Shown here piece after piece: positions 9,974 to 53,880 of a DNA stretch of 64,000 bases (positions are counted from its first letter, which is position 1; every line of letters starts with the position of its first letter). Location of the stretch: the IMG/VR virus record IMGVR_UViG_3300044972_002389, positions 264,604-328,603 of that record; one strand, 5' to 3'. Position numbers and translations under genes: made by a program. Under the pieces are notes generated by a model. That model was given only the letters and a program-made list of their open reading frames with translations, was not told the DNA's origin and made no database searches.

Positions 9974-11068
9974 ATGAAACCTTTAGATTTATCCCGATTT
10001 AGAAAAGATATTGCCAAGAGCATTCCAGGACTATCAGTTGGCTTTCGCGATCCCAAGGTATGGATCTCAACAGGCAACTATGCACTCAATTATGCTATCT
10101 CTGGTAGATTCCGTGACGGTGGCATCCCGCTAGGCAAAGTAACAATGCTGGCTGGACAAAGTGGCAGTGGCAAGAGCTTTCTGGCAGCAGGAAACTTAAC
10201 CTCTAATGCACAGAAAAAAGATGTGTTTGTGGTGTTGATCGACAGTGAGAATGCACTAGATGAAAAATGGCTAAAGGCGCTAGATGTAGATACATCTGAG
10301 GACAAGCTTTTGAAGGCAAACTTGGCAATGATTGATGATGTTGCCAAGTTGATCTCAGATTTCATGAAGGACTACAAAGCTCGTTACAACAGCGTGAGTG
10401 AGGAAGAACGCCCTCGCGTGCTCTTTGTGATTGACAGTTTAGGCATGCTCCTAACTCCAACTGATGTCAATCAATTTGAGGCTGGTGAGCTCAAGGGTGA
10501 TATGGGGCGCAAGCCGCGTGCACTTGCTGCGCTTGTGCGAAATTGTGTTAACATGTTTGGTGAATATGATATCGGCATGATTTGCACAAACCACAGTTAT
10601 GCAAGCCAAGACATGTTCAATCCAGATGATGTCATTAGTGGTGGGCAAGGCCCCATCTACGCCAGCAGCATTGTGTTGGCTATGCGCAAACTCAAGCTCA
10701 AGGAAGATGAGATGGGCAACAAGACAACAGACGTCAAAGGTATCCGTGCTCAATGTCGTGTAATGAAGACGCGATATAACAAACCCTTTGAGACTGTTGA
10801 GGTTAAAATCCCATACGACCGAGGCATGGACCCCTACAGTGGCTTGTATGACCTGTTTGTTCAGAAAGGGTTGTTAGTCAAAGAAGGAAACAAGTGGTGT
10901 TACACTCGTTTGGATGGCACACAGATCAAGCAGTTTGAAAAAGCTTGGGATCGCAATGAAGATGGATGTCTTGATCAAATAATGAATGAGTTCCATCAGA
11001 AGCTAAGCAAAATTGCCCCTGTGTTAGAAGATATTGAAGTTCAAGAGCCTGAAGAAGATCTATCATAA
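9974..11068 (+). CDS. uvsX: RecA/UvsX recombinase
   Basis: ISTGNYALN, AGQSGSGKS, IDSENALD, VIDSLG, SGG motifs. Confidence 0.93.
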   Translation: MKPLDLSRFRKDIAKSIPGLSVGFRDPKVWISTGNYALNYAISGRFRDGGIPLGKVTMLAGQSGSGKSFLAAGNLTSNAQKKDVFVVLIDSENALDEKWLKALDVDTSEDKLLKANLAMIDDVAKLISDFMKDYKARYNSVSEEERPRVLFVIDSLGMLLTPTDVNQFEAGELKGDMGRKPRALAALVRNCVNMFGEYDIGMICTNHSYASQDMFNPDDVISGGQGPIYASSIVLAMRKLKLKEDEMGNKTTDVKGIRAQCRVMKTRYNKPFETVEVKIPYDRGMDPYSGLYDLFVQKGLLVKEGNKWCYTRLDGTQIKQFEKAWDRNEDGCLDQIMNEFHQKLSKIAPVLEDIEVQEPEEDLS

Positions 11069-11089: not shown

Positions 11090-11124
11090 AAGAGCGGGAC
11101 AAAATGTCCCGCTCTCATTGTTTT
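11090..11124 (+). terminator. hairpin separating uvsX from the bL33/RlmN cassette
   Basis: AGAGCGGGAC-AAAAT-GTCCCGCTCT followed by CATTGTTTT. Confidence 0.55.
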
Positions 11125-11167
11125 GAGCTGATTGCCATATATAATCACGCATAGCAGGAGACACAGG

Positions 11168-11359
11168 ATGGCAAAAGCAGCAACCGTAATTGTAATGTTG
11201 GTAAATCAAGACCATGATACACCAACCAAATACATGACGCATGTTACTACAAAAGGTGCAAAGTCTAGTGAAAAGTTGCGTCTGAAGAAGTATGACCCAG
11301 TGGTACAAAAACATTGTAACTTTGGTCAAAAAAAACTACCTTCGCCCAAATCCCGTTAA
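11168..11359 (+). CDS. rpmG: 50S ribosomal protein bL33 homolog (no Zn-ribbon)
   Basis: MAKAATVIVMLV...EKLRLKKYDPVVQKHCNF.QKK matches bL33 (MAKA.T.KI.L...K...KKYDP..+KHV.F.E.K); SD AGGAG at 11156-11160. Confidence 0.85.
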   Translation: MAKAATVIVMLVNQDHDTPTKYMTHVTTKGAKSSEKLRLKKYDPVVQKHCNFGQKKLPSPKSR

Positions 11360-11376
11360 CCAGAAAGTTTCAACGT

Positions 11377-12222
11377 ATGTTACAACAGATCAACTCGCAA
11401 CTGGATGCGAGTGTAAATTTTGTTGAGCAACAGCTGACAGGATTTATTGAGTCGCGTTATGTAAGACGTCAAGCTGACTATTTCATCGCGTATCTCAGTT
11501 CACAAACTGGCTGTAACCGTGGATGCCAAATGTGTCATCTCACTGCAACCAAACAAACACAATTTTCGAATCTGGACCAAAGTGATTTTGTCAGTCAGTT
11601 TGAAACTGTATTGTCTCATTATGAAAAAGACACTCCTGCGCAAACAGTGCACTTGAATTTCATGGCCCGGGGAGAGCCGCTAGCCAATACCACGATAACC
11701 AAAACTGGAACAGAACTTTTTTGGCGACTGGGTAACATGGCACGAGACCGAGGACTGCGAGTAAAATTCAACGTGTCTACCATTATGCCAGTAACGCTCA
11801 AAAAAAGCCTGTGTGAAGTGTTCCCTCTTATCCCGGCGAATGTGTATTACTCCATATATTCAATAAATTCTTCATTTAGAAACAAATGGTTACCAGCTGC
11901 GATGCCAGTAGAGCGTGCGCTAGCTAATCTCAAGGAATATCAACAAGTTTCAAAAAAGATCATCAAGTTTCACGGTGCATTTATCAAGGGCGAAAATGAC
12001 AGTGAACAAGATGTTGAAGAGCTGATGAACACCATTGCTGAATACAGTTTTCACAGTGAGTTCAACATTGTGAGATACAATCCCTATAGCAGTCAACAGG
12101 GTGAAGAAAGTCTACGGGTGGATGACATAGCTGCACAAATCCAGCAATATATGCCCTGTAAGATTATTCCGAAAGTTGGTCAAGACGTATATGCAAGTTG
12201 CGGCCAATTTGTACCCAAGTAA
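11377..12222 (+). CDS. RlmN/Cfr-like radical SAM protein
   Basis: SSQTGCNRGCQMC (CX3CX2C), FMARGEPLAN (cf. MGMGEP), C-terminal DVYASCGQF (cf. DI.AACGQL). Confidence 0.85.
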   Translation: MLQQINSQLDASVNFVEQQLTGFIESRYVRRQADYFIAYLSSQTGCNRGCQMCHLTATKQTQFSNLDQSDFVSQFETVLSHYEKDTPAQTVHLNFMARGEPLANTTITKTGTELFWRLGNMARDRGLRVKFNVSTIMPVTLKKSLCEVFPLIPANVYYSIYSINSSFRNKWLPAAMPVERALANLKEYQQVSKKIIKFHGAFIKGENDSEQDVEELMNTIAEYSFHSEFNIVRYNPYSSQQGEESLRVDDIAAQIQQYMPCKIIPKVGQDVYASCGQFVPK

Positions 12223-12261
12223 CCTTTAAATAACCCCAGATTTTTTGTGGAGATCAAACTA

Positions 12262-12480
12262 ATGGAAATTGATGCAAAACTAATTGCAGAGCTTTGGGAA
12301 ACAGTCAAGGACTTGATTCCCTCTGGCAAGCGAGACGATGTGGCACTGGAATTCATCAGTGTTTTTGAAGAAAATGATGTAGAGATTCATGATCTTGACT
12401 CACTGCGTGGTGCAGATGACAGCCTTGATTCTGCCCTTGATGAACTCTATGGAGATGTTGACGTAGACGACGACTGCTAG
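12262..12480 (+). CDS. small acidic hypothetical protein
   Basis: After TAAATA at 12227; SD GGAG. Confidence 0.55.
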   Translation: MEIDAKLIAELWETVKDLIPSGKRDDVALEFISVFEENDVEIHDLDSLRGADDSLDSALDELYGDVDVDDDC

Positions 12481-12491
12481 TATCAATTGTC

Positions 12492-12944
12492 ATGTGGTTT
12501 AACAGAGTAAAAAACGACCTATCGCAAATTCCTGATATGGTCGACTACTACAACAATGAGCTTGAGGTTGCTCAAAAAGAATGCAAGGTTTTTGGCAGCC
12601 TTGAAAAAAACAGTCAAGAGCTGCCAGGTCAGGTAAGTTGGCGTTTCAGTCAACTGCAAGAGATTGAGGCTGTGTTGAAACATCTCAACAACCAAGTGGA
12701 CAAAATGAGAAGCGACTTTTATCGTCGCTATCTCGAACGCTACAACAGAGAATTGAGTGACCGCGCCATTGAAAAATACATTGATGGCGAGGCTGATGTT
12801 CAAACAATGATGAGTCTAGTGAATGAGGTGGCATTGATTCGCAACAAGTATCTTGGTGTAATCAAGTCAATGGAGATCAAGGGTTTTCAACTTAACAATA
12901 TCATACGCCTTAGGTCTGTGGGTATGAATGATATTGCGCTCTAA
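12492..12944 (+). CDS. uvsY: recombination mediator UvsY-like
   Basis: Y.R.LS.RAIEKYIDGEADV...K.LE.KGFQLNNI.RLR pattern; close to uvsX. Confidence 0.75.
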   Translation: MWFNRVKNDLSQIPDMVDYYNNELEVAQKECKVFGSLEKNSQELPGQVSWRFSQLQEIEAVLKHLNNQVDKMRSDFYRRYLERYNRELSDRAIEKYIDGEADVQTMMSLVNEVALIRNKYLGVIKSMEIKGFQLNNIIRLRSVGMNDIAL

Positions 12945-13252
12945 CTCCCACAGACTTCATCCCGCAAGATCTGTTCCATCTCATCTGGAGTTACTTGGCC
13001 ACATTCCAACACAGTGTAGAGCTGGGCTAGCTTATGGCCCCAGCTTTCATCATGCCTGTTGAGACAGTCAACAGTTTCTGCCATTTTGGTGACCAATATA
13101 TTTTGACTTGTCCAAAGCTGCTCTAAAGCACTCACACTGCCTTTTAGTAAGCTGATCAATTCAGTCTGGGACAGTGTGTTTTCCTTCTCTAATGAGTTCT
13201 TCAAATGGGTCAAAAAATCATTTGGGTTATCAAACATCAAAACTTTGTTCAT
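12941..13252 (-). CDS. hypothetical protein
   Basis: 103-aa ORF filling the gap. Confidence 0.5.
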   Translation of the reverse strand: MNKVLMFDNPNDFLTHLKNSLEKENTLSQTELISLLKGSVSALEQLWTSQNILVTKMAETVDCLNRHDESWGHKLAQLYTVLECGQVTPDEMEQILRDEVCGS

Positions 13253-13310
13253 ATGAAAATTATGAAAGATCTATTTTGGGTTTGTCTATTGAAACCATTA
13301 CACTCCCTGC

Positions 13311-14123
13311 ATGATCAAATTATTTTTTGCTATCTCAGCTCTTATATTCTCACTTAGTGATGCCTATGCTCAACAAACGCCGCCAAGGCCTATGGAGGCA
13401 TGTCAATCAGAAGCGCCGTGGGGGTTTCCCACTGCCAATTTACCCACTGGCCAACCCATCTGTCGCATGGCTTATGCGTTATTGCACGACAATAGGGCAA
13501 AGATACCATTATGGACTGTCTATACGATTACGCCTGAAAAGGCCATGGGGTGTGGAAAGAGAAGTGATGCATTCTCTCCAGACCAAAGCTTGCCTCGTGG
13601 TGAGCGAGCTGAATTGGGCGACTATCGACAATCAGGATATGACACTGGTCACATGGTGAATTCAGCCGATATGTTGTGGAGTGTTACTGCTGAGCGTGAG
13701 AGTTTCATCCTCAGCAATATGAGCCCGCAATTGGCTAATGTAAACCGCGGTGCGTGGAAAACTCTAGAGACTGGTATCAGAGGATGGACCCAACAGACTA
13801 ATGATACCTATACCGTTTACAGCGGAAACATTTATGATGTGATGACTGCCAAAACCATTGGCCGCAATGCAGTAGTAGTGCCCAACAGCCTCTGGAAGGT
13901 TGTTGTAAGCCATCGCACTGGCGAGGCGTGGGCTTTTCTTTTTCCCAATCAACCCAACATCTCTACAGAACTCAAAAGCTTCCAGGTCACAGTAGTTGAA
14001 CTGGAATCTCTTGTGGGATATGAAATTCCCATGCCAGGCGATAAAACTGCTAAACCCTTCTTACTTCCTGTTCGATCTGTAAGTGAGGCTCGGCAAGCAG
14101 CTTGTACTTTGCCTCAGAGGTAA
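13311..14123 (+). CDS. DNA/RNA non-specific endonuclease (NucA/EndoG family) with signal peptide
   Basis: SGYDTGHM, ESF.LSNMSPQ...NRG.W..LE motifs; hydrophobic N-terminus ending AYA. Confidence 0.88.
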   Translation: MIKLFFAISALIFSLSDAYAQQTPPRPMEACQSEAPWGFPTANLPTGQPICRMAYALLHDNRAKIPLWTVYTITPEKAMGCGKRSDAFSPDQSLPRGERAELGDYRQSGYDTGHMVNSADMLWSVTAERESFILSNMSPQLANVNRGAWKTLETGIRGWTQQTNDTYTVYSGNIYDVMTAKTIGRNAVVVPNSLWKVVVSHRTGEAWAFLFPNQPNISTELKSFQVTVVELESLVGYEIPMPGDKTAKPFLLPVRSVSEARQAACTLPQR

Positions 14124-14843
14124 TTACACCTTATCCCAAAAGGTCAAAACTGCTGACCGGGCAGAACTCAGTCGCATACCAGCAGCAACAGCCTTTTGAA
14201 TAATGTCAGATTGAGACGCACCTTGGGGCTTATGTGTGCGGATCCATTCCCGGATCCTAGCCGCATAAGATCCATCCTTCTGAGAAGGGATCTTGGTGGT
14301 TGTATTTCCAGAGACATCAATCCCTGGAATAATTTGTTTACGCCAATTGCAACTCCGATCAATCCACCCCTTGGCCTTGAATCGGTACTTATGGCCCTTC
14401 TGCACCTTTGTGTGTCTATGAGCCGAGATCACCACTTCTTGCCCAGTGGAGGTAGTGTAGTGGTAGTTTCCGCCAGAGTATGTGGTTTTGTAGCTGTGGT
14501 AGATGCTGCCATTACCTCCCAGTGCTACACAAACCCTCTTCCAACCCTGGTCATGATCCCGGCCCAAACTGGGGTTCATGAAACACACGATGTGCGCCAC
14601 CTCATGTGCTGTGGCATTTTGTAGCACATCATCAAACTCAGACCCTTGGATAACCTGTTGGTTGAAATGCACAGAATACTTACGAGTGAACGTGCGCTGG
14701 CAAATCCGGCAGCAGGCCTTTCCAGCCTTCATCCCTCGAAGGTCAAAGCGAATCGCAGTCTGCCGCAAATTCAAGCCATACAGCTGATCAGCAAGCTCAA
14801 AAAGGCTGTGCACCTTTTGAGTCATCTGTGCCAAGCGATCCAT
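14124..14843 (-). CDS. SprT-like zinc metalloprotease
   Basis: F.LRG.KAG, HEVAH, H..GWK.V motifs. Confidence 0.8.
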   Translation of the reverse strand: MDRLAQMTQKVHSLFELADQLYGLNLRQTAIRFDLRGMKAGKACCRICQRTFTRKYSVHFNQQVIQGSEFDDVLQNATAHEVAHIVCFMNPSLGRDHDQGWKRVCVALGGNGSIYHSYKTTYSGGNYHYTTSTGQEVVISAHRHTKVQKGHKYRFKAKGWIDRSCNWRKQIIPGIDVSGNTTTKIPSQKDGSYAARIREWIRTHKPQGASQSDIIQKAVAAGMRLSSARSAVLTFWDKV

Positions 14844-14868
14844 ACTCACAGTCCCTTGTTTGCCCAGC

Positions 14869-14896
14869 AATGTAGCTGAATTTGCGACGCTGTCAA
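14869..14896 (-). promoter_or_regulatory. host sigma70-type early promoter (alphaproteobacterial type)
   Basis: TTGACA-N14-GCTACATT on the minus strand; similar elements near 15358-15385(-), 15642-15670(+) and 15963-15990(+). Confidence 0.55.
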
Positions 14897-24443: not shown

Positions 24444-24497
24444 CTTGACGTATTTTCTCTCGTGTGTATAATGGTTGAACACACGAGAGAGGTTGCT

Positions 24498-25940
24498 GTG
24501 AAGATTTTCAACGTTCGGGCTGGCTTTGCTACCAACAGCAGTAGTAGTCACAGCATTGTGATGATTCCAGCCGGAATGCGGGTTGGCACAGATGAGCACA
24601 ACCGCTTTGAATATGGTTGGGAACAGTTCACCCTGGCTGATCAAGAAAGCAAGTCGGCGTATTTTGCCACCCAGCTATACCATGCTCTGGATAGGGAAAA
24701 TGTGTCAGGGGAAACCGCTGTTCAGTTGATGAACAGCTGGCTTGGCACAAACTACACAGCAGACACTTTTTGCAGCTATGGTGTGGACCATCAAAGCATT
24801 TGGGGAATTTTCTCAAGCTCAGATCCTGTTGATGGTGGATTTGTCAAGAGCCTCTACCAGTATGTGATGCGCGATGATGTTGTTATCCTCGGCGGGAACG
24901 ACAACAGCGATGGGCAAACACCCCCAGACGGCAGCTTTGAGAACGACATCACTGCGGCTATCCAACACTCGGGCGAAAAGCGCATTCGCCAGGATGGGGA
25001 TTATTGGACCTTGTTCAGCCCCAGCAGTGGGCACAAGGTGCGGCTCAGCATGCAAGATGACGCTCTTCCTTACGTCAAGAGCACTTATCCTGAGCTCGTC
25101 GACGTTAAGCTGACCGACCACTGCCTTTACAAATGTAATTGGTGTTATCAGGGCAGCACCCCAGAAGGCAAGCATGCACAACTGAGTGAAGTTCTCAATT
25201 TGGTTGATACGTTTAGTCGGATGGGAGTGTTTGAAATTGCTTATGGTGGCGGGGAGACAACTGACCACCCCAATTTCGCAGAGATCATTCAGTACACCGC
25301 AAGTAAGAACATTGTACCAAACTTCACTACTTTTGGTGTTAAGTGGAGTTTGGATCGGGAGAAGGCATTGGCTGTAGTGAACCATGCTGGTGCTATTGGT
25401 GTGAGTATTCACAATGCCAAAGACTTGAACAAAATCTCCAAGATTAGGAGTAACCTAGACAATCACATGAAGAGTCAGGGCGAGAAGTGGTGGAAACTGC
25501 CCTCCATTATGGCTCAGCATGTGGTAGGCAGCGTGGACCTTGCTGAAACAGCAGAACTCCTGGAACGTTGCTGGCAGGAAGGTGTGAACGTTCTTCTACT
25601 CGGCTACAAAAATGTGGGATTTGGTGAAAACTTCGCCCCCCACGATCTCACTGGGTTGGACTTGGTTCTGCGACTTCGGCAGGAAAAAGGCCAGGCCCAC
25701 TACAACGCCAGATTCAGTATGCTGGGAGTGGATACGGCTTTTGTGCAACAGTTTGACCCAATCCTGCAGGAACTGGAGATTCCCAGCGTGTTGAAAACTG
25801 CCGAAGAGGGTAAATTTTCAATGTATGTGGATGCAGTCACTATGCGGCAGGGGCCCAGCAGCTATATGCCAGATCAGATGGTTGATGTGGACACAAGTCA
25901 ACTGCGTGACAGCATCTCCCAAGCCTATATTACCTGGTAG
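24498..25940 (+). CDS. radical SAM protein with N-terminal RxGFxTNSSSS domain
   Basis: CLYKCNWC (CX3CX2C), GGGE; GTG start with GAGAGG SD; promoter TTGACG...TATAAT at about 24445-24472. Confidence 0.8.
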   Translation: MKIFNVRAGFATNSSSSHSIVMIPAGMRVGTDEHNRFEYGWEQFTLADQESKSAYFATQLYHALDRENVSGETAVQLMNSWLGTNYTADTFCSYGVDHQSIWGIFSSSDPVDGGFVKSLYQYVMRDDVVILGGNDNSDGQTPPDGSFENDITAAIQHSGEKRIRQDGDYWTLFSPSSGHKVRLSMQDDALPYVKSTYPELVDVKLTDHCLYKCNWCYQGSTPEGKHAQLSEVLNLVDTFSRMGVFEIAYGGGETTDHPNFAEIIQYTASKNIVPNFTTFGVKWSLDREKALAVVNHAGAIGVSIHNAKDLNKISKIRSNLDNHMKSQGEKWWKLPSIMAQHVVGSVDLAETAELLERCWQEGVNVLLLGYKNVGFGENFAPHDLTGLDLVLRLRQEKGQAHYNARFSMLGVDTAFVQQFDPILQELEIPSVLKTAEEGKFSMYVDAVTMRQGPSSYMPDQMVDVDTSQLRDSISQAYITW

Positions 25941-40508: not shown

Positions 40509-41177
40509 ATGACAGTTAGTAATGAAGACAAAGACGCAATGAGCCGTCTCTTGCAGATTATGAACGGAGAAAAAACTCCACAGAGTCCTCGCTCAGCGCG
40601 CAGTCCAGCCAGTTCTGCTCCCCTAGAACTGGCTGGTGCTGGGCAAGTTACTAGGGCAGATGTTGATGCTATGGCGCAAGTGTTGACGCGCCTAAACAAT
40701 GTTGTAGGTCAAGTGTCAACAGATATCTTGTTGGAAAGTGACAACAATCCTGAGCTAGCACAAGCTCTTGTAACTGAAACAACCTATGCTGGTATCAAAA
40801 TAGGGCGCTATGAAATCAAAATCAATCTAGATGAAACTAGGCTGGTCAACAAACAACATTACAGTGTTGTTAACAAGATTTCTGGTGAAGTTTTGGCTCA
40901 CGAACTAGGCCTTTATGAAGCTGCACATGGCTTGGTAAAAATGCTAAACAGCGGCCTCTATATCAACAGCCAAAGCGTCAGAGATCTTTTGGAAGCGGAA
41001 GCCGCCTATACTAGCCACAAAATGGATGCTATTCGATTCAAGCGCCGTGCCAAAAAGAGTCTGATTGAAGGCAAGGGCCACGATACCAGTCTATTTGAAG
41101 CACGTCGAGTAGCAGCAATGGATAAAGCAATGACAGCTAAAAGTCGTATCAAAAAAATCTACAACAGCTTGCCATGA
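40509..41177 (+). CDS. hypothetical protein
   Basis: SD GGAG; packed. Confidence 0.55.
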   Translation: MTVSNEDKDAMSRLLQIMNGEKTPQSPRSARSPASSAPLELAGAGQVTRADVDAMAQVLTRLNNVVGQVSTDILLESDNNPELAQALVTETTYAGIKIGRYEIKINLDETRLVNKQHYSVVNKISGEVLAHELGLYEAAHGLVKMLNSGLYINSQSVRDLLEAEAAYTSHKMDAIRFKRRAKKSLIEGKGHDTSLFEARRVAAMDKAMTAKSRIKKIYNSLP

Positions 41178-41473
41178 TACTTGTTACAGACCAAGCACAA
41201 ACACAACTGTCCAAAATTCTCCCTCTTGGGGGAAGATTTAGGATTCTCATTGAGAGCGGTGGATGCAGCGGCTTTGAAAAAAAGTTTGAAATCTGCAACG
41301 ATATTCGCCCTGACGATTTTAACTTTGGACATGTATTGATTGACCCACAAAGTCTGGAACTGTTGGGCAACGCCACCTTAGACTATAAGATCAGCTTGGG
41401 GGAACAAAAATTTGTCCTAGACATACCCCAAGCGTCAATTTCCTGCGGATGTGGTAAAAGCTTCAATTTTTGA
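41174..41473 (+). CDS. IscA/HesB-family Fe-S cluster assembly accessory protein
   Basis: GGCSGF, DP.SL..L...TLDY, C-terminal CGCGKSF. Confidence 0.9.
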   Translation: MILVTDQAQTQLSKILPLGGRFRILIESGGCSGFEKKFEICNDIRPDDFNFGHVLIDPQSLELLGNATLDYKISLGEQKFVLDIPQASISCGCGKSFNF

Positions 41474-51642: not shown

Positions 51643-51711
51643 TCAGACACCCAACGTTTTGACACGACGTTGGGTGATCAGGTATATTACAAGAAATACC
51701 AAAGGAAACCT

Positions 51712-51993
51712 ATGATGCAAGCAGAGATTTGGAGCAAACATTTTTGCCCCTATTGTGACCGGGCCAAAGACCTACTCAAGAGTTTGAATATTCCTTACCA
51801 GGAATATATCATCAGCCCTGGATACGATGAAGCACCTGCTGCAACCAATCAACAATATGTTACCAAGGCTGAGCTGTTGCAGAAGTTGCCAAGTGCCAAA
51901 ACTGTGCCTCAAATCTGGATCGACAGCGTGCATATTGGCGGTTATACTGATCTAGAGACAAAAGTCAAAGCTGGCAGCATATCTCCACAATAA
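51712..51993 (+). CDS. glutaredoxin
   Basis: CPYC, TVPQI, IGGY. Confidence 0.92.
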   Translation: MMQAEIWSKHFCPYCDRAKDLLKSLNIPYQEYIISPGYDEAPAATNQQYVTKAELLQKLPSAKTVPQIWIDSVHIGGYTDLETKVKAGSISPQ

Positions 51994-52039: not shown

Positions 52040-52876
52040 ATGGCCGGTGAGCAAGACGGGTATGTGGACTTCAATGACAGAACAACCCCTAATGAAATAG
52101 CGAGTGTGCAAATTCGAACCGAACCTCCCCCACGGACTGAGCCTGCATTTGAAAGTTTTGTAAGGCGTATTGAAAGCTATGCAAGGGAGCCAGCAGTGGT
52201 AGCTATGAATGATGCTATCCAAGCTGCACAAGCCGCCGCAGCAAACAATCCGGATGCACAGCAGGCATTACAACAGAGCTTGGGTCCCGTACAAAATGTT
52301 GGCCTAATAGGCGGGTTCGGGGCTCTGTTGGCAAGTCATAGAGACAGAATTGTGGATGACGGTACTCGAATATTTCGGGCAATAAATGACTTTTTTCAAC
52401 CAGGTAGAGCACAAGATCCCAGTAGGTGTGCTACTGTTGGTGATTACATAGGAACCATACAAGGCCGATACAACGACACATTGGGATCTATTACTAGTGC
52501 TATAGGCCAATTTGTAGGAGCTCTTGTAAGTATCCCTGCACGCATAATTGGGGCTATAACCTCTGCCATTTCTGGCTTGATTGGGGCAATTGTGGGTGGC
52601 ATTTCTGCTGTTGTACAAGCTGCTGCTGGAGTTGTAAGTAGTGCTGTGGGAGTACTCACTGGCGCCATAAGTGGGGTCAGTAGCTTGCTAGGCACCATTG
52701 GCGCTGGTATAAGCCAAGTTACAGGAGCAGTAGCTCGCGAAACACAAAATATCACAACAGCATTAACATCTGGATTTGCATCTGGATTCAGTCGCAGTGT
52801 TTCAGGAGTGAATCCCTGTGTAGCCGCAGCACAACAGGGTTCACCTGTGGCACAATTTGGCACACCACCAACCTAA
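52040..52876 (+). CDS. Gly/Ala-rich hypothetical (probable virion) protein
   Basis: Late promoter at 52012; amphipathic small-residue repeats. Confidence 0.55.
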   Translation: MAGEQDGYVDFNDRTTPNEIASVQIRTEPPPRTEPAFESFVRRIESYAREPAVVAMNDAIQAAQAAAANNPDAQQALQQSLGPVQNVGLIGGFGALLASHRDRIVDDGTRIFRAINDFFQPGRAQDPSRCATVGDYIGTIQGRYNDTLGSITSAIGQFVGALVSIPARIIGAITSAISGLIGAIVGGISAVVQAAAGVVSSAVGVLTGAISGVSSLLGTIGAGISQVTGAVARETQNITTALTSGFASGFSRSVSGVNPCVAAAQQGSPVAQFGTPPT

Positions 52877-52879
52877 TGG

Positions 52880-52907
52880 TTGACAACTGAAGAATCCCCG
52901 ATATACT
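52880..52907 (+). promoter_or_regulatory. sigma70-type promoter for the tmRNA
   Basis: TTGACA-N16-TATACT. Confidence 0.7.
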
Positions 52908-52912
52908 AGGAA

Positions 52913-53180
52913 GTGATGCTGTTGATAGCAGCCAAATAAGTTGTGCAAGACCTGGGGGCAGCACCCAGCATCTCCAGAATTTGGGGATGAAGCAGGATTC
53001 GATTGCAAACAGTAAGGGTTGAAGGAGGCATTCGGTGAGATATGGCCGCCCAGAGATGGGAACAGTTCTAAACGTAAAAATGCTAACGACAACAACGTTG
53101 CATTTGAGTCTACCGGTCTAATAGCCGCATAGTCTCAGCGGGAGGGCAACCCTCCTTGGAACAGAAGCGGTTGCACTTTT
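52913..53180 (+). ncRNA. ssrA: two-piece (circularly permuted) tmRNA
   Basis: T-arm CTGGG-GGCAGCA-CCCAG plus acceptor 3' strand CATCTCCA (to 52976) precede the 5' strand GGGGATG (52983), giving a G3.U70 pair; tag frame 53082-53132 encodes ANDNNVAFESTGLIAA*. Outer ends approximate. Confidence 0.92.
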
Positions 53181-53193
53181 AAAAGGAATTACA

Positions 53194-53880
53194 ATGAACA
53201 CACTTGCTGCCGACTCCAGTTATGACGCCGGACTTCGAACGTTCATGCTGGGCATCTACAATCGAATGACAGCCGCCTTGGTTGTAACAGGAGCTACAGC
53301 TTGGCTGGTATCTAAATTTTTTGCCACTCTCATGACAGGATGGACAGGCATTGGCCTTATGCTCTTGCCCTTGGCATTTGTGTTGGTATTGAGTTTTGGT
53401 ATTGAACGACTCAGATACAGCACAGCCAATCTCCTGTTTTGGCTATTTTCTGCCAGCATGGGCTTGAGCATGAGCACAATTTTCCTCACGTTCACTGGCA
53501 CTAGTATTGCCACTGTGTTTTTCATTACCAGTGCCACTTTTGGTGCTGCCAGTGTGTATGGTTATGCTACCTCACGTGACTTAACAAGCATGGGTTCTTT
53601 CTTGATGGTGGGCCTAATTGGCGTATTGATAGCCAGTGTTGTGAACATTTGGCTAGCCAGTTCAATCTTGACCTTTGTTGTGAGCATTATTGGTGTTATT
53701 GTGTTTGTGGGGCTCACGGCTTACGACACACAAAACTTGAAGAATGATTACTACAGCAATGGTGAAGTGTTTGGATTGGACAGTCCAGCCAAAAGCAGTT
53801 TGTATGGGGCACTAAGTCTCTACTTGAACTTCATCAACATCTTTCAGCTGCTCCTCAACTTGATTGGTGATCGAGAATAA
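53194..53880 (+). CDS. Bax inhibitor-1/YccA-family membrane protein
   Basis: Seven TM segments; DAGLR.FM..IY..M, T.RDLT.MGSFL, LTAYDTQ, GALSLYLNFINIF. Confidence 0.9.
   Translation: MNTLAADSSYDAGLRTFMLGIYNRMTAALVVTGATAWLVSKFFATLMTGWTGIGLMLLPLAFVLVLSFGIERLRYSTANLLFWLFSASMGLSMSTIFLTFTGTSIATVFFITSATFGAASVYGYATSRDLTSMGSFLMVGLIGVLIASVVNIWLASSILTFVVSIIGVIVFVGLTAYDTQNLKNDYYSNGEVFGLDSPAKSSLYGALSLYLNFINIFQLLLNLIGDRE

What the first reader, a model, noticed from the sequence alone, without database searches (positions are those of the whole stretch)
11140..12222. Phage bL33 ribosomal protein paired with an RlmN/Cfr-like enzyme: a 50S-remodelling cassette
Seen: between uvsX and uvsY, behind a hairpin and a TATAAT box (11140-11145), sit a bL33 homolog and, 17 nt later, an RlmN/Cfr-like radical SAM gene. 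The bL33 is divergent (central insertion, LPSPKSR extension, no Zn ribbon). Established: bL33 lies near the 50S E site; RlmN and Cfr methylate 23S A2503, and RlmN also methylates tRNA A37. Inference: together with the tmRNA at 52.9 kb and an IscA-type Fe-S carrier, the phage may rewire host ribosomes or protect them from anti-translation defences.
Basis: partly seen in the sequence, partly recalled or inferred. Interest (0 to 1): 0.8.

Follow-up and report, generated by a model that had tools for sequence, protein, structure and literature searches.

The report
Phage bL33 beside atypical RlmN-like enzyme
A giant freshwater phage carries a real copy of ribosomal protein bL33 next to a radical-SAM enzyme that has the RlmN/Cfr fold but lacks two of that family's defining features; the two genes are neighbours in only one phage lineage and each occurs without the other, so a joint ribosome-remodelling cassette is not supported.

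Summary
Both genes are real. The small ORF (true CDS 11168-11359, 63 aa) passes the curated bL33 thresholds. The next gene, 17 nt later (11377-12222, 281 aa), has the RlmN/Cfr fold. Both are under purifying selection.

The enzyme is not a bona fide RlmN or Cfr. It scores 63 bits against a cut-off of 290. It lacks the N-terminal helical domain. It has an invariant Tyr where RlmN has its essential resolving Cys118, in 119/119 homologues from the protein search and 75/79 relatives in bacterial genomes and MAGs. It keeps CX3CX2C and the methyl-carrier Cys.

It belongs to a large, mostly jumbo-phage family (phrog_27142) of at least 35 lineages. These usually have no bL33 nearby, and 12/35 sit beside tRNA genes.

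The bL33/enzyme adjacency is confined to one lineage, in the uvsX-uvsY gap. Among 13 non-redundant loci there are four arrangements: L33-rSAM, rSAM-L33, rSAM alone and L33 alone.

The bL33 "divergent" features are shared with cellular bL33 of aquatic bacteria. Viral bL33 is already published.

The most interesting part is the Tyr-for-Cys class-A radical-SAM subfamily, whose substrate is unknown (probably RNA, leaning tRNA).

The parts
9974..11068 (+). uvsX (RecA-like recombinase); upstream border of the variable gap
   Evidence: Pfam RecA 6.5e-16. 70% identical to Sinorhizobium phage Phosso and 62% to Agrobacterium phage Atu_ph07.
11091..11115 (+). G+C-rich hairpin with T-rich tail (terminator-like) after uvsX
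   Evidence: 11 pairs, 7 G-C. Conserved in relatives L017 and L003.
11136..11146 (+).
   Evidence: No -35 partner found. Function as a promoter is inferred only.
11156..11160 (+). Shine-Dalgarno AGGAG, 7 nt before the ATG of bL33
   Evidence: Read from the sequence. GGAG is invariant in the 4-sequence alignment.
11168..11359 (+). bL33 homologue, 63 aa, Zn-independent (C-) type with a 3-aa loop insert and a basic C-terminal tail
   Evidence: PF00471 30 bits (cut-off 25); TIGR01023 29 bits (cut-off 23.95). Alignment A2. dN/dS 0.06-0.2.
11377..12222 (+). Radical-SAM enzyme of the RlmN/Cfr fold, phage subfamily phrog_27142. Key residues: C46/C50/C53 cluster motif, Tyr39 at the resolving-Cys position, M96-A-R-G-E100, methyl-carrier-type Cys275.
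12247..12480 (+). Conserved 77-aa acidic protein of unknown function, always between this block and uvsY
   Evidence: No family hit. Present in all four arrangements.
12492..12944 (+). uvsY (recombination mediator); downstream border of the gap
   Evidence: phrog_231 2.6e-16.

Best explanation
The stretch holds two separate, functional, translation-related accessory genes of a freshwater jumbo myovirus. The phage is a relative of the Atu_ph07/Phosso/Rak2-like group and its tmRNA is of the alphaproteobacterial type. The genes sit in the variable uvsX-uvsY gap. They are probably co-transcribed from a conserved promoter-like element that follows the uvsX terminator hairpin.

Gene 1 is a genuine bL33 of a subtype also found in aquatic bacteria. 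As inferred for other virus-encoded exchangeable ribosomal proteins, it most likely enters host 50S subunits during infection.

Gene 2 is the bare catalytic core of a class-A radical-SAM methylase (RlmN/Cfr fold). It belongs to a large, mostly phage-borne subfamily. The likely mechanism is as follows. It binds a [4Fe-4S] cluster through C46/C50/C53. It probably carries a methyl group on Cys275, as RlmN does on Cys355. It uses an invariant Tyr39, not a second Cys, in the step that releases the product. Its substrate is most likely an adenine in RNA, with tRNA somewhat more likely than 23S rRNA.

The two genes are neighbours by lineage history, not because they form an obligate two-part machine.
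For: Shown:
- bL33 passes the curated thresholds and aligns end to end with E. coli bL33.
- The rSAM model (pLDDT 90.9) matches RlmN structures at TM 0.75-0.79, E about 1e-13, and Cfr at 5.5e-09.
- CX3CX2C and the C355-equivalent Cys are invariant. The C118-equivalent is Tyr in 119/119 family members and in 75/79 relatives from bacterial genomes and MAGs.
- About 95 N-terminal residues of RlmN are absent.
- Both genes are under purifying selection.
- A tree of 13 non-redundant loci shows four arrangements, each monophyletic: L33-rSAM 5, rSAM only 5, rSAM-L33 2, L33 only 1.
- The remaining 30 of 35 rSAM lineages in IMG/VR have no bL33 within 6 kb. tRNA genes lie within 6 kb in 12/35 lineages, with up to 21 tRNAs.
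- RNA-repair or tRNA-maturation genes neighbour the rSAM in isolates: RtcB and tRNAs in Psa21, CCA-adding enzyme in CcrColossus, RlaP.
- The window carries Fe-S support genes: an IscA-type protein and a glutaredoxin.

From the literature:
- C118/C105 is indispensable for resolving the RNA-protein crosslink and acts as a general base (PMC9692996; PMC10838301).
- Viral bL33 and the exchangeability of bL33 are described in PMC6375957.
Against: - No biochemical or expression data exist; no RNA run could be listed.
- The tRNA association is only 12/35 lineages and has no genome-wide null. The window itself has no tRNA gene.
- In Planctomycetota and Myxococcota the family sits beside AbiEii, LRR, sulfotransferase and sulfatase genes, which say nothing clear about RNA.
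- Loss of the N-terminal lobe and of Cys118 could mean a different substrate or different chemistry.
- Extra invariant arginines (R27, R98, R233) might fit a small phosphorylated substrate as well as RNA.
- Contigs that lack one partner are incomplete, so the missing gene could lie elsewhere in those genomes.
- The two genes stay adjacent in two different orders. That is weak evidence for some functional link.
Confidence: 0.6

Rival explanations
1. One reading: bL33 and the enzyme act together as a 50S-remodelling cassette. The enzyme methylates 23S A2503 (C2 or C8) while phage bL33 replaces host bL33. This yields phage-specialised or defence-resistant ribosomes.
For: - Both gene products are homologous to 50S-associated factors.
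- They are adjacent and probably co-transcribed.
- The adjacency persists in two gene orders and down to 65% rSAM identity.
- The earliest-branching locus (midpoint root) already has both genes.
Against: - Either gene is retained alone at the same locus (L022, L026, L028-31; L101).
- The pairing is absent from 30 other rSAM lineages and from other bL33-bearing viral contigs.
- The enzyme lacks the N-terminal lobe, Cys118 and the MGMGE motif, and scores far below the RlmN/Cfr cut-offs.
- bL33 (near the E site) and A2503 (in the exit tunnel near the peptidyl-transferase centre) lie in different parts of the 50S subunit (general knowledge).
Confidence: 0.12
2. The enzyme does not act on RNA. It modifies DNA, a free nucleotide or a protein. 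bL33 is an unrelated neighbour.
For: - It sits among DNA-metabolism genes here (gp32, uvsX, uvsY, Endonuclease_NS, SprT-like) and near DNA ligase or RNR in other phages.
- It has lost the N-terminal helical lobe of RlmN.
- It has additional invariant Arg residues.
- Its bacterial neighbours are unrelated to translation.
Against: - All structurally closest enzymes are RNA adenine methylases.
- It recurs next to tRNA arrays and RNA-repair genes.
- No class-A radical-SAM methylase with a non-RNA substrate is described in the review consulted.
Confidence: 0.15
3. Because the resolving Cys is missing, the enzyme does not turn over. It becomes covalently trapped on its target RNA and acts as a stoichiometric inactivator or marker of a host RNA.
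For: - C118A and C118S RlmN form stable RNA-protein crosslinks.
- The phage family has no Cys at that position in any member.
Against: - Tyr is strictly invariant rather than variable. That points to a catalytic role (base or H-atom relay), not simple loss.
- The family is also chromosomal in free-living bacteria, where a suicide RNA-trapper would be costly.
- There is no direct evidence.
Confidence: 0.07
4. Phage bL33 does not serve as a ribosome component. It could be a decoy, a regulator of host rpmG expression, or a Zn-independent spare.
For: - It is a C- (Zn-free) form.
- Viral bL31 and bL33 are enriched in aquatic viromes (PMC6375957).
Against: - The full-length bL33 architecture is kept and the pI is 10.1, like E. 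coli bL33.
- Purifying selection acts along the whole protein.
- The closest cellular bL33s are also C-, so there is no obvious Zn advantage.
Confidence: 0.1

Closest known systems
RlmN (E. coli YfgB; TIGR00048), a dual-specificity 23S A2503 / tRNA A37 C2-methylase and class-A radical-SAM methylase
   Same: - Same fold (TM 0.75-0.79).
- CX3CX2C motif.
- C-terminal flexible loop with ...[A/S]-C-G... methyl-carrier Cys (C355 = Cys275).
- Conserved GE of the MGMGE motif and the Arg in the FR/IR motif.
   Different: - Lacks about 95 N-terminal residues, including the helical lobe.
- Resolving Cys118 is replaced by an invariant Tyr.
- MGMGE becomes MARGE.
- Family-specific invariant H54, R98, W171.
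- Only 17-21% identity in the structural alignments; 63 bits against a cut-off of 290.
Cfr (23S A2503 C8-methylase; NF000424, TIGR04432)
   Same: Best PDB sequence hit (9p0p, 3.1e-10). Same class-A architecture.
   Different: Cfr keeps C105 and its N-terminal lobe. The phage protein scores 48-54 bits against cut-offs of 530-550. Nothing indicates C8 specificity or a resistance function.
phrog_27142 and GenBank-annotated homologues in jumbo phages (Psa21, Phabio, 201phi2-1, D6, CcrColossus, CcrPW, Brevundimonas phages)
   Same: Direct family membership (1.2e-90). 40-43% identity, same length and same Tyr.
   Different: Those phages have no bL33 next to the gene. The small upstream ORFs in Psa21 and CcrColossus are unrelated to bL33. 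Their contexts are tRNA and RNA-repair genes. None is experimentally characterised as far as the searched literature shows.
Virus-encoded ribosomal proteins, including viral bL33 (Mizuno et al. 2019, PMC6375957; PhiMa05, PMC13157829)
   Same: A small, exchangeable, surface-accessible ribosomal protein carried by an aquatic virus. Host-like sequence.
   Different: Here it is in a T4-like jumbo myovirus, at the uvsX-uvsY locus and beside an RlmN-like gene. This clade has about 9 clusters at 90% identity. It is distinct from a second viral 57-aa clade (L103-L105).
Cellular bL33 of aquatic bacteria with a loop insert and KK[LM]Px[PH][SK]K tail (e.g. P0134, L244)
   Same: Same length class, same insert position, same basic tail, no Zn-binding Cys. 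44-51% identity.
   Different: These are encoded in cellular contexts: T2SS, NDK, AspRS for P0134; FTHFS, MTHFR, CMAS for L244. Their taxon is not established here.

Membership tests
bL33 (Pfam PF00471 / TIGR01023 rpmG_bact) | Score at or above the curated HMM cut-off | tested here: met
   PF00471 30.0 bits against 25. TIGR01023 29.0 bits against 23.95. The subfamily model NF001860 is not reached (28.3 against 50).
bL33 (Pfam PF00471 / TIGR01023 rpmG_bact) | Full-length collinear alignment with a ribosome-resident bL33 | tested here: met
   35% identity to E. coli bL33 over residues 1-57, with one 3-aa insertion. A profile search of PDB hits bL33 chains of many species. That profile contained the E. 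coli sequence, so its E. coli hits are circular.
bL33 (Pfam PF00471 / TIGR01023 rpmG_bact) | Physical presence in the 50S subunit | not testable with these tools
   Needs ribosome mass spectrometry.
RlmN / Cfr (class-A radical-SAM RNA methylases) | Curated HMM cut-off | tested here: not met
   TIGR00048 63.4 bits against 290. NF000424 53.7 against 530. TIGR04432 48.5 against 550.
RlmN / Cfr (class-A radical-SAM RNA methylases) | CX3CX2C radical-SAM cluster motif | tested here: met
   C46, C50 and C53 are invariant.
RlmN / Cfr (class-A radical-SAM RNA methylases) | Methyl-carrier Cys in the C-terminal loop (RlmN C355 / Cfr C338) | tested here: met
   Cys275 aligns with C355. It is invariant in 119/119 family members and 76/76 ungapped genomic relatives. 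Methylation of this Cys was not tested.
RlmN / Cfr (class-A radical-SAM RNA methylases) | Resolving Cys (RlmN C118 / Cfr C105) | tested here: not met
   Tyr39 occupies this position in 119/119 and 75/79 sequences. The 4 with Cys are distant canonical-type sequences at 26-27% identity.
RlmN / Cfr (class-A radical-SAM RNA methylases) | N-terminal helical domain (PF21016 RlmN_N) | tested here: not met
   The alignment starts at about RlmN residue 80-96. The protein has 281 aa against 384.
RlmN / Cfr (class-A radical-SAM RNA methylases) | MGMGE motif | tested here: not met
   The motif is M-A-R-G-E with an invariant Arg98. Motif role is taken from PMC10838301.
RlmN / Cfr (class-A radical-SAM RNA methylases) | Three-dimensional fold | tested here: met
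   The AF2 model (pLDDT 90.9) has RlmN and Cfr as its top 11 PDB matches, TMq 0.63-0.79.
RlmN / Cfr (class-A radical-SAM RNA methylases) | Methylation of 23S A2503 or tRNA A37 | not testable with these tools
   Needs an in vitro assay or nucleoside mass spectrometry.
phrog_27142 (phage 'Fe-S-cluster redox domain-containing' proteins) | Profile match over the full length | tested here: met
   1.2e-90, residues 4-279 on profile positions 8-299 of 300.
Obligate two-gene module (bL33 + rSAM) | Conserved co-occurrence across independent lineages | tested here: not met
   One lineage only. Both single-gene states exist. Caveat: the contigs are incomplete.

The most novel reading that the evidence does not exclude
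The Tyr-for-Cys, N-terminally truncated RlmN-like proteins are a new branch of class-A radical-SAM chemistry. Release of the methylated base would be tyrosine-mediated, or the enzyme would install a different adduct or deliberately capture RNA covalently. Jumbo phages, megaplasmids and some bacteria would use this branch to mark tRNA anticodon loops or rRNA. In phages this might keep translation running in the face of host tRNA- or ribosome-targeting defences. In this lineage a phage bL33 may act as a helper.
Probability: 0.15. Interest if true: 0.85.

Novelty: new variant of a known kind. Interest (0 to 1): 0.5.

Why it matters
Viral bL33 is already documented, so that half adds a new member only.

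The enzyme half is more valuable. It defines a large family: 1,781 homologues at E<=0.001 in the protein search, at least 35 viral lineages, and 223 loci in bacterial genomes and MAGs. Databases label this family 'RlmN' or 'Cfr family', yet it lacks the residue that the literature calls indispensable for RlmN/Cfr turnover.

Two consequences follow. First, such genes should not be read as rRNA A2503 methylases or as cfr-like resistance genes. Second, enzymologists gain a natural test of what the resolving residue does. For phage biology, it would add an RNA-modification enzyme to the translation toolkit of jumbo phages (tRNAs, tmRNA, RNA repair, ribosomal proteins).

Tried and rejected
- Nucleotide search of the locus against GenBank phages: no match.
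- tblastn of bL33 against phages: no match at E<=0.01. No sequenced isolate in that collection carries this bL33.
- The idea that a small bL33-like protein always precedes the rSAM was rejected. The upstream small ORFs in Psa21, CcrColossus and L004, and the downstream one in L007, are unrelated to bL33.
- PADLOC gave no defence-system match for the rSAM, bL33 or the 77-aa protein.
- Search for a conserved protein partner of the rSAM across 35 viral lineages: none beyond the uvsX/uvsY lineage. Only tRNA genes recur.
- The conserved neighbours in Planctomycetota and Myxococcota (AbiEii, LRR, sulfotransferase, sulfatase) probably reflect vertical synteny. They gave no functional lead.
- tRNA genes are not enriched near the homologues found in bacterial genomes and MAGs.
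- pI comparison was uninformative.
- RNA-seq evidence: no RNA run could be listed.
I rebuilt it without that sequence.
- One literature search failed on a term-length slip.
- The sigma-70 scan does not call a promoter at 11140. The 10-mer is not over-represented in the window.
Full report
WHAT IS THERE

The window is part of IMG/VR contig IMGVR_UViG_3300044972_002389, which is 328,603 bp long. The same stretch is held by 20 lake-water DNA runs. The genome is a jumbo T4-like myovirus. Its UvsX is 70% identical to Sinorhizobium phage Phosso and 62% to Agrobacterium phage Atu_ph07, and about 60% to the GAP32 and other roughly 350-kb Escherichia jumbo phages. Its tmRNA is of the alphaproteobacterial permuted type (52876-53177). 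ARAGORN finds no tRNA gene in the 64 kb.

The gene order around the finding is gp32-like, uvsX (9974-11068), a 63-aa ORF, a 281-aa ORF, a 77-aa ORF, then uvsY (12492-12944).

After uvsX there is an 11-bp G+C-rich hairpin with a T-rich tail (11091-11115). Then comes CATATATAAT (11136-11145), AGGAG (11156-11160) and the ATG at 11168. The hairpin, the C[AC]TATATAATCA motif and GGAG are conserved in three relatives. The sigma-70 scan finds no -35 partner, and the 10-mer is not enriched in the window. "Promoter" therefore remains an inference. The gap between the stop of the small ORF and the next ATG is exactly 17 nt. The one correction is that the CDS starts at 11168.

THE SMALL PROTEIN IS A bL33

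It passes Pfam PF00471 (30 bits, cut-off 25) and TIGR01023 (29 bits, cut-off 23.95). It aligns end to end with E. coli bL33, fetched from K-12, at 35% identity. It has a 3-residue insertion in the first loop and a basic C-terminal tail. It has no CxxC pairs, but neither has E. coli bL33, so this is the Zn-independent type.

Between relatives, synonymous sites are saturated while the protein is conserved. dN/dS is 0.06-0.2 where it can be measured.

In 5.8 billion proteins its close clade has only 9 clusters. An exhaustive HMMER search of 1.84 billion representatives gives 22 hits at E<=0.001.

Several of these hits, and an abundant marine 64-aa bL33 found in the metagenome scan, share the loop insert and a KK[LM]Px[PH][SK]K-type tail. 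They lie in plainly cellular contexts. P0134 sits among type-II secretion, NDK and AspRS genes. L244 sits among formate-THF ligase, MTHFR and CMAS genes. The ESM Atlas labels those clusters about 70% viral on the basis of few records. I could not reconcile this with the cellular context.

Viral bL33 is already published. More than 10 aquatic viral contigs were reported in Mizuno et al. 2019, which also notes that bL33 is exchangeable and contacts E-site tRNA (PMC6375957). The jumbo cyanophage PhiMa05 also encodes one (PMC13157829).

THE ENZYME HAS THE RlmN/Cfr FOLD BUT IS NOT AN RlmN OR A Cfr

Its best NCBIfam hits are RlmN (63 bits, cut-off 290) and Cfr models (48-54 bits, cut-offs 530-550). 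The alignments cover only RlmN positions of about 80-342. It matches phrog_27142 at 1.2e-90.

An AlphaFold2 model built from 38 diverse homologues has pLDDT 90.9. Its 11 best PDB matches are RlmN and Cfr structures, with TMq 0.63-0.79 and E down to 5e-14.

I aligned 119 family members with genuine E. coli RlmN (for the sequence, for the alignment). The results are:
- The CX3CX2C cysteines (C46, C50, C53) are invariant.
- The C355-equivalent (Cys275, in a low-confidence and presumably flexible C-terminal loop) is invariant.
- The position of Cys118 is Tyr in 119 of 119 sequences.
- The first 95 or so residues of RlmN, including the helical lobe, are missing.

HMMER alignments to Cfr (9p0p) and an RlmN homologue (6fz6) give the same Tyr/Cys correspondence. 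The canonical MGMGE motif is MARGE with an invariant Arg. H54, R98 and W171 are further family signatures.

According to the literature read here, class-A radical-SAM methylases use two conserved cysteines. C118 (Cfr C105) is indispensable for resolving the covalent RNA-protein intermediate and probably acts as a general base. C118A and C118S variants are trapped on RNA (PMC9692996; PMC10838301; PMC5130265). Plant RlmN-like proteins keep C118. A family with a strictly conserved Tyr at that place is therefore a distinct variant. An invariant residue points to a catalytic substitute rather than simple loss.

HOW WIDE IS THE FAMILY

The word-based search gives 1,781 homologues at E<=0.001. Many are on contigs of 250-512 kb. 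Isolates carrying the gene are all jumbo phages of 207-357 kb: Pseudomonas phages Psa21, Phabio, 201phi2-1, D6, RVTF4 and Viktualia; Caulobacter phages CcrColossus and CcrPW; and Brevundimonas phages. Identity to the window protein is 40-43%. ESM Atlas clusters are about 75% viral.

The family is not exclusively viral. A scan of one genome per species found 223 loci. These include closed chromosomes of Planctomycetota and Myxococcota, roughly 1-Mb Pseudomonas megaplasmids, and Achromobacter, Nocardia, Acetobacter and Rhizobiales. Some "MAG" hits are clearly phage contigs. For example, L174 has the same 244,062-bp contig length as the IMG/VR contig of L078. Of 79 such proteins, 75 have the Tyr. 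The four with Cys are distant sequences at 26-27% identity and are of the canonical type.

IS THE PAIRING CONSERVED?

I surveyed 80 IMG/VR loci with the enzyme and 21 with the bL33, plus assemblies and 80 metagenome loci. Within the lineage that keeps the uvsX...uvsY frame there are four arrangements:
- uvsX-L33-rSAM-p77-uvsY, the window type. It is also present at only 65% rSAM identity on a 476-kb contig (L005/L006).
- uvsX-rSAM-L33-p77-uvsY (L023-25, L033).
- uvsX-rSAM-p77-uvsY without bL33 (L022, L026, L028-31).
- uvsX-L33-p77-uvsY without the enzyme (L101).

On a UvsX+UvsY tree of 13 non-redundant loci, each arrangement is one clade. The fewest changes are one for bL33, one for the enzyme, and three for the arrangement as a whole.

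The gap also accepts other inserts in relatives: a roughly 1-kb ORF in L017 and a 546-aa DUF7487 ORF in L005. A NUMOD3-type ORF lies just upstream of uvsX in L003. It behaves as a variable hot spot.

Outside this lineage the enzyme never has a bL33 within 6 kb; that covers 30 of 35 lineages defined at 70% identity. Other bL33-bearing contigs have no such enzyme nearby (L102-L108, L197-L273).

The association thus rests on a single evolutionary event, and each gene survives without the other. Two caveats apply. Most contigs are fragments, so the missing partner could be elsewhere in those genomes. And the two genes remain adjacent in two different orders, which is weak evidence for some link.

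WHAT DOES THE ENZYME'S COMPANY SAY?

No protein neighbour recurs beyond the uvsX lineage. tRNA genes do: they lie within 6 kb in 12 of 35 lineages, with up to 21, 13 and 9 tRNAs. In Psa21 the gene lies among tRNA genes and next to RtcB. In CcrColossus it lies near a CCA-adding enzyme. In another group it lies near an RlaP RNA-repair nucleotidyltransferase. On a 512-kb contig it lies near release-factor-like ORFs.

This leans toward tRNA or translation, but I have no genome-wide null. Other neighbours are DNA ligase and ribonucleotide reductase. Bacterial contexts (AbiEii, LRR protein, sulfotransferase, sulfatase) are uninformative.

MOST LIKELY MECHANISM

Shown: a radical-SAM cluster site; a C355-type Cys on a flexible loop; the RlmN fold; an invariant Tyr at the resolving position; and purifying selection.

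Inferred: SAM methylates Cys275. A second SAM yields the 5'-deoxyadenosyl radical, which activates the S-methyl group. The resulting methylene radical adds to an sp2 carbon of an adenine in RNA. Tyr39, as base or H-atom relay, enables release of the product.

The substrate is unknown. I rate RNA at about 0.6-0.7 overall, with tRNA ahead of 23S rRNA.

The phage's IscA-type protein (41174-41470) and glutaredoxin (51670-51990) could support the Fe-S enzymes. There is a second radical-SAM ORF at 24462-25937.

bL33 most likely enters 50S subunits, as proposed for other viral exchangeable ribosomal proteins. This is inference.

COMPARISON, NOVELTY, SCORE

- bL33: a new member of a known kind.
- Enzyme: a new variant of a known kind. 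It is already annotated in GenBank and IMG as "RlmN", "Cfr family" or "Fe-S-cluster redox domain". No paper in the searched library deals with it. Its departure from the two-cysteine rule appears not to have been described.
- The "50S-remodelling cassette": not supported as a module.
- Interest: 0.5. The headline claim weakens, but a well-delimited and testable enzymological oddity emerges.

Noticed in passing
window 52876-53177 (+): Alphaproteobacterial-type permuted (two-piece) tmRNA gene in the phage (Rfam RF01849 64.6 bits, RF04321 72.9 bits). ARAGORN did not call it. It suggests an alphaproteobacterial host.
   Followed up: partly
window 24462-25937 (+): A second radical-SAM ORF (492 aa; PF04055 5e-11), with weak PADLOC hits to prokaryotic viperin models (about 4e-09). 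Function unknown.
   Followed up: partly
window 41174-41470, 51670-51990, 53194-53877 (+): An IscA/HesB-type Fe-S biogenesis protein (PF01521), a glutaredoxin (PF00462) and a Bax1-inhibitor-like membrane protein (PF01027, 9e-53) are encoded by the phage. The first two may serve its Fe-S enzymes.
   Followed up: partly
L017:4800-5800; L005:3108-4748; L003:458-1183; L024, L025, L101 uvsX ORFs: The uvsX-uvsY interval is a hot spot. L017 has an extra ORF of about 1 kb between uvsX and bL33. L005 has a 546-aa DUF7487 ORF there. L003 has a NUMOD3-type ORF just upstream of uvsX. uvsX ORFs are elongated (413-523 aa, against 364) in three relatives, possibly by inserts.
   Followed up: no
L112-L171 (e.g. 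L153:1789-4989; L146:4125-4898): In Planctomycetota and Myxococcota genomes the Tyr-variant rSAM gene is divergently flanked by an AbiEii-type nucleotidyltransferase toxin, an LRR protein of about 520 aa, a sulfotransferase and a sulfatase. The LRR protein recurs in 26 loci.
   Followed up: partly
L117, L136, L179: The same rSAM family is carried by Pseudomonas megaplasmids of about 0.95-1.06 Mb (pPLMAXa, pMPCFBP13716, P. serbica unnamed1).
   Followed up: no
L007:1-2771: On a 512,622-bp contig, an FtsH-like protease and release-factor-like ORFs that appear split (36 aa + 190 aa; PCRF/RF-1) lie about 3 kb upstream of the rSAM homologue.
   Followed up: no
L205-L269 (e.g. L244:5001-5192): A very abundant marine 64-aa bL33 has the same loop insert and a KKMPPHSK tail. 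It lies in cellular context (FTHFS, MTHFR, rhodanese/UPF0176, CMAS). The ESM Atlas nevertheless labels its clusters about 70% viral. The contradiction is unresolved and the taxon unknown.
   Followed up: partly
L103-L105, L226, L248, L270-L273: A second bL33 clade (57 aa, no insert, ...KESKKLK end). L103-L105 are IMG/VR viral contigs; the others are unclassified metagenome contigs. None has an rSAM within the fetched flanks (5-6 kb).
   Followed up: partly
ESM Atlas structural neighbours: A Bacillota cluster (491 aa) fuses an RlmN-like core with a cytidine/tRNA-deaminase-type domain (PF00383, PF14437).
   Followed up: no
window 12944-14870: Downstream of uvsY there is a 103-aa ORF on the minus strand, a secreted-type DNA/RNA non-specific endonuclease (PF01223, 1.7e-46) and a SprT-like protein. 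These are syntenic in all close relatives.
   Followed up: no
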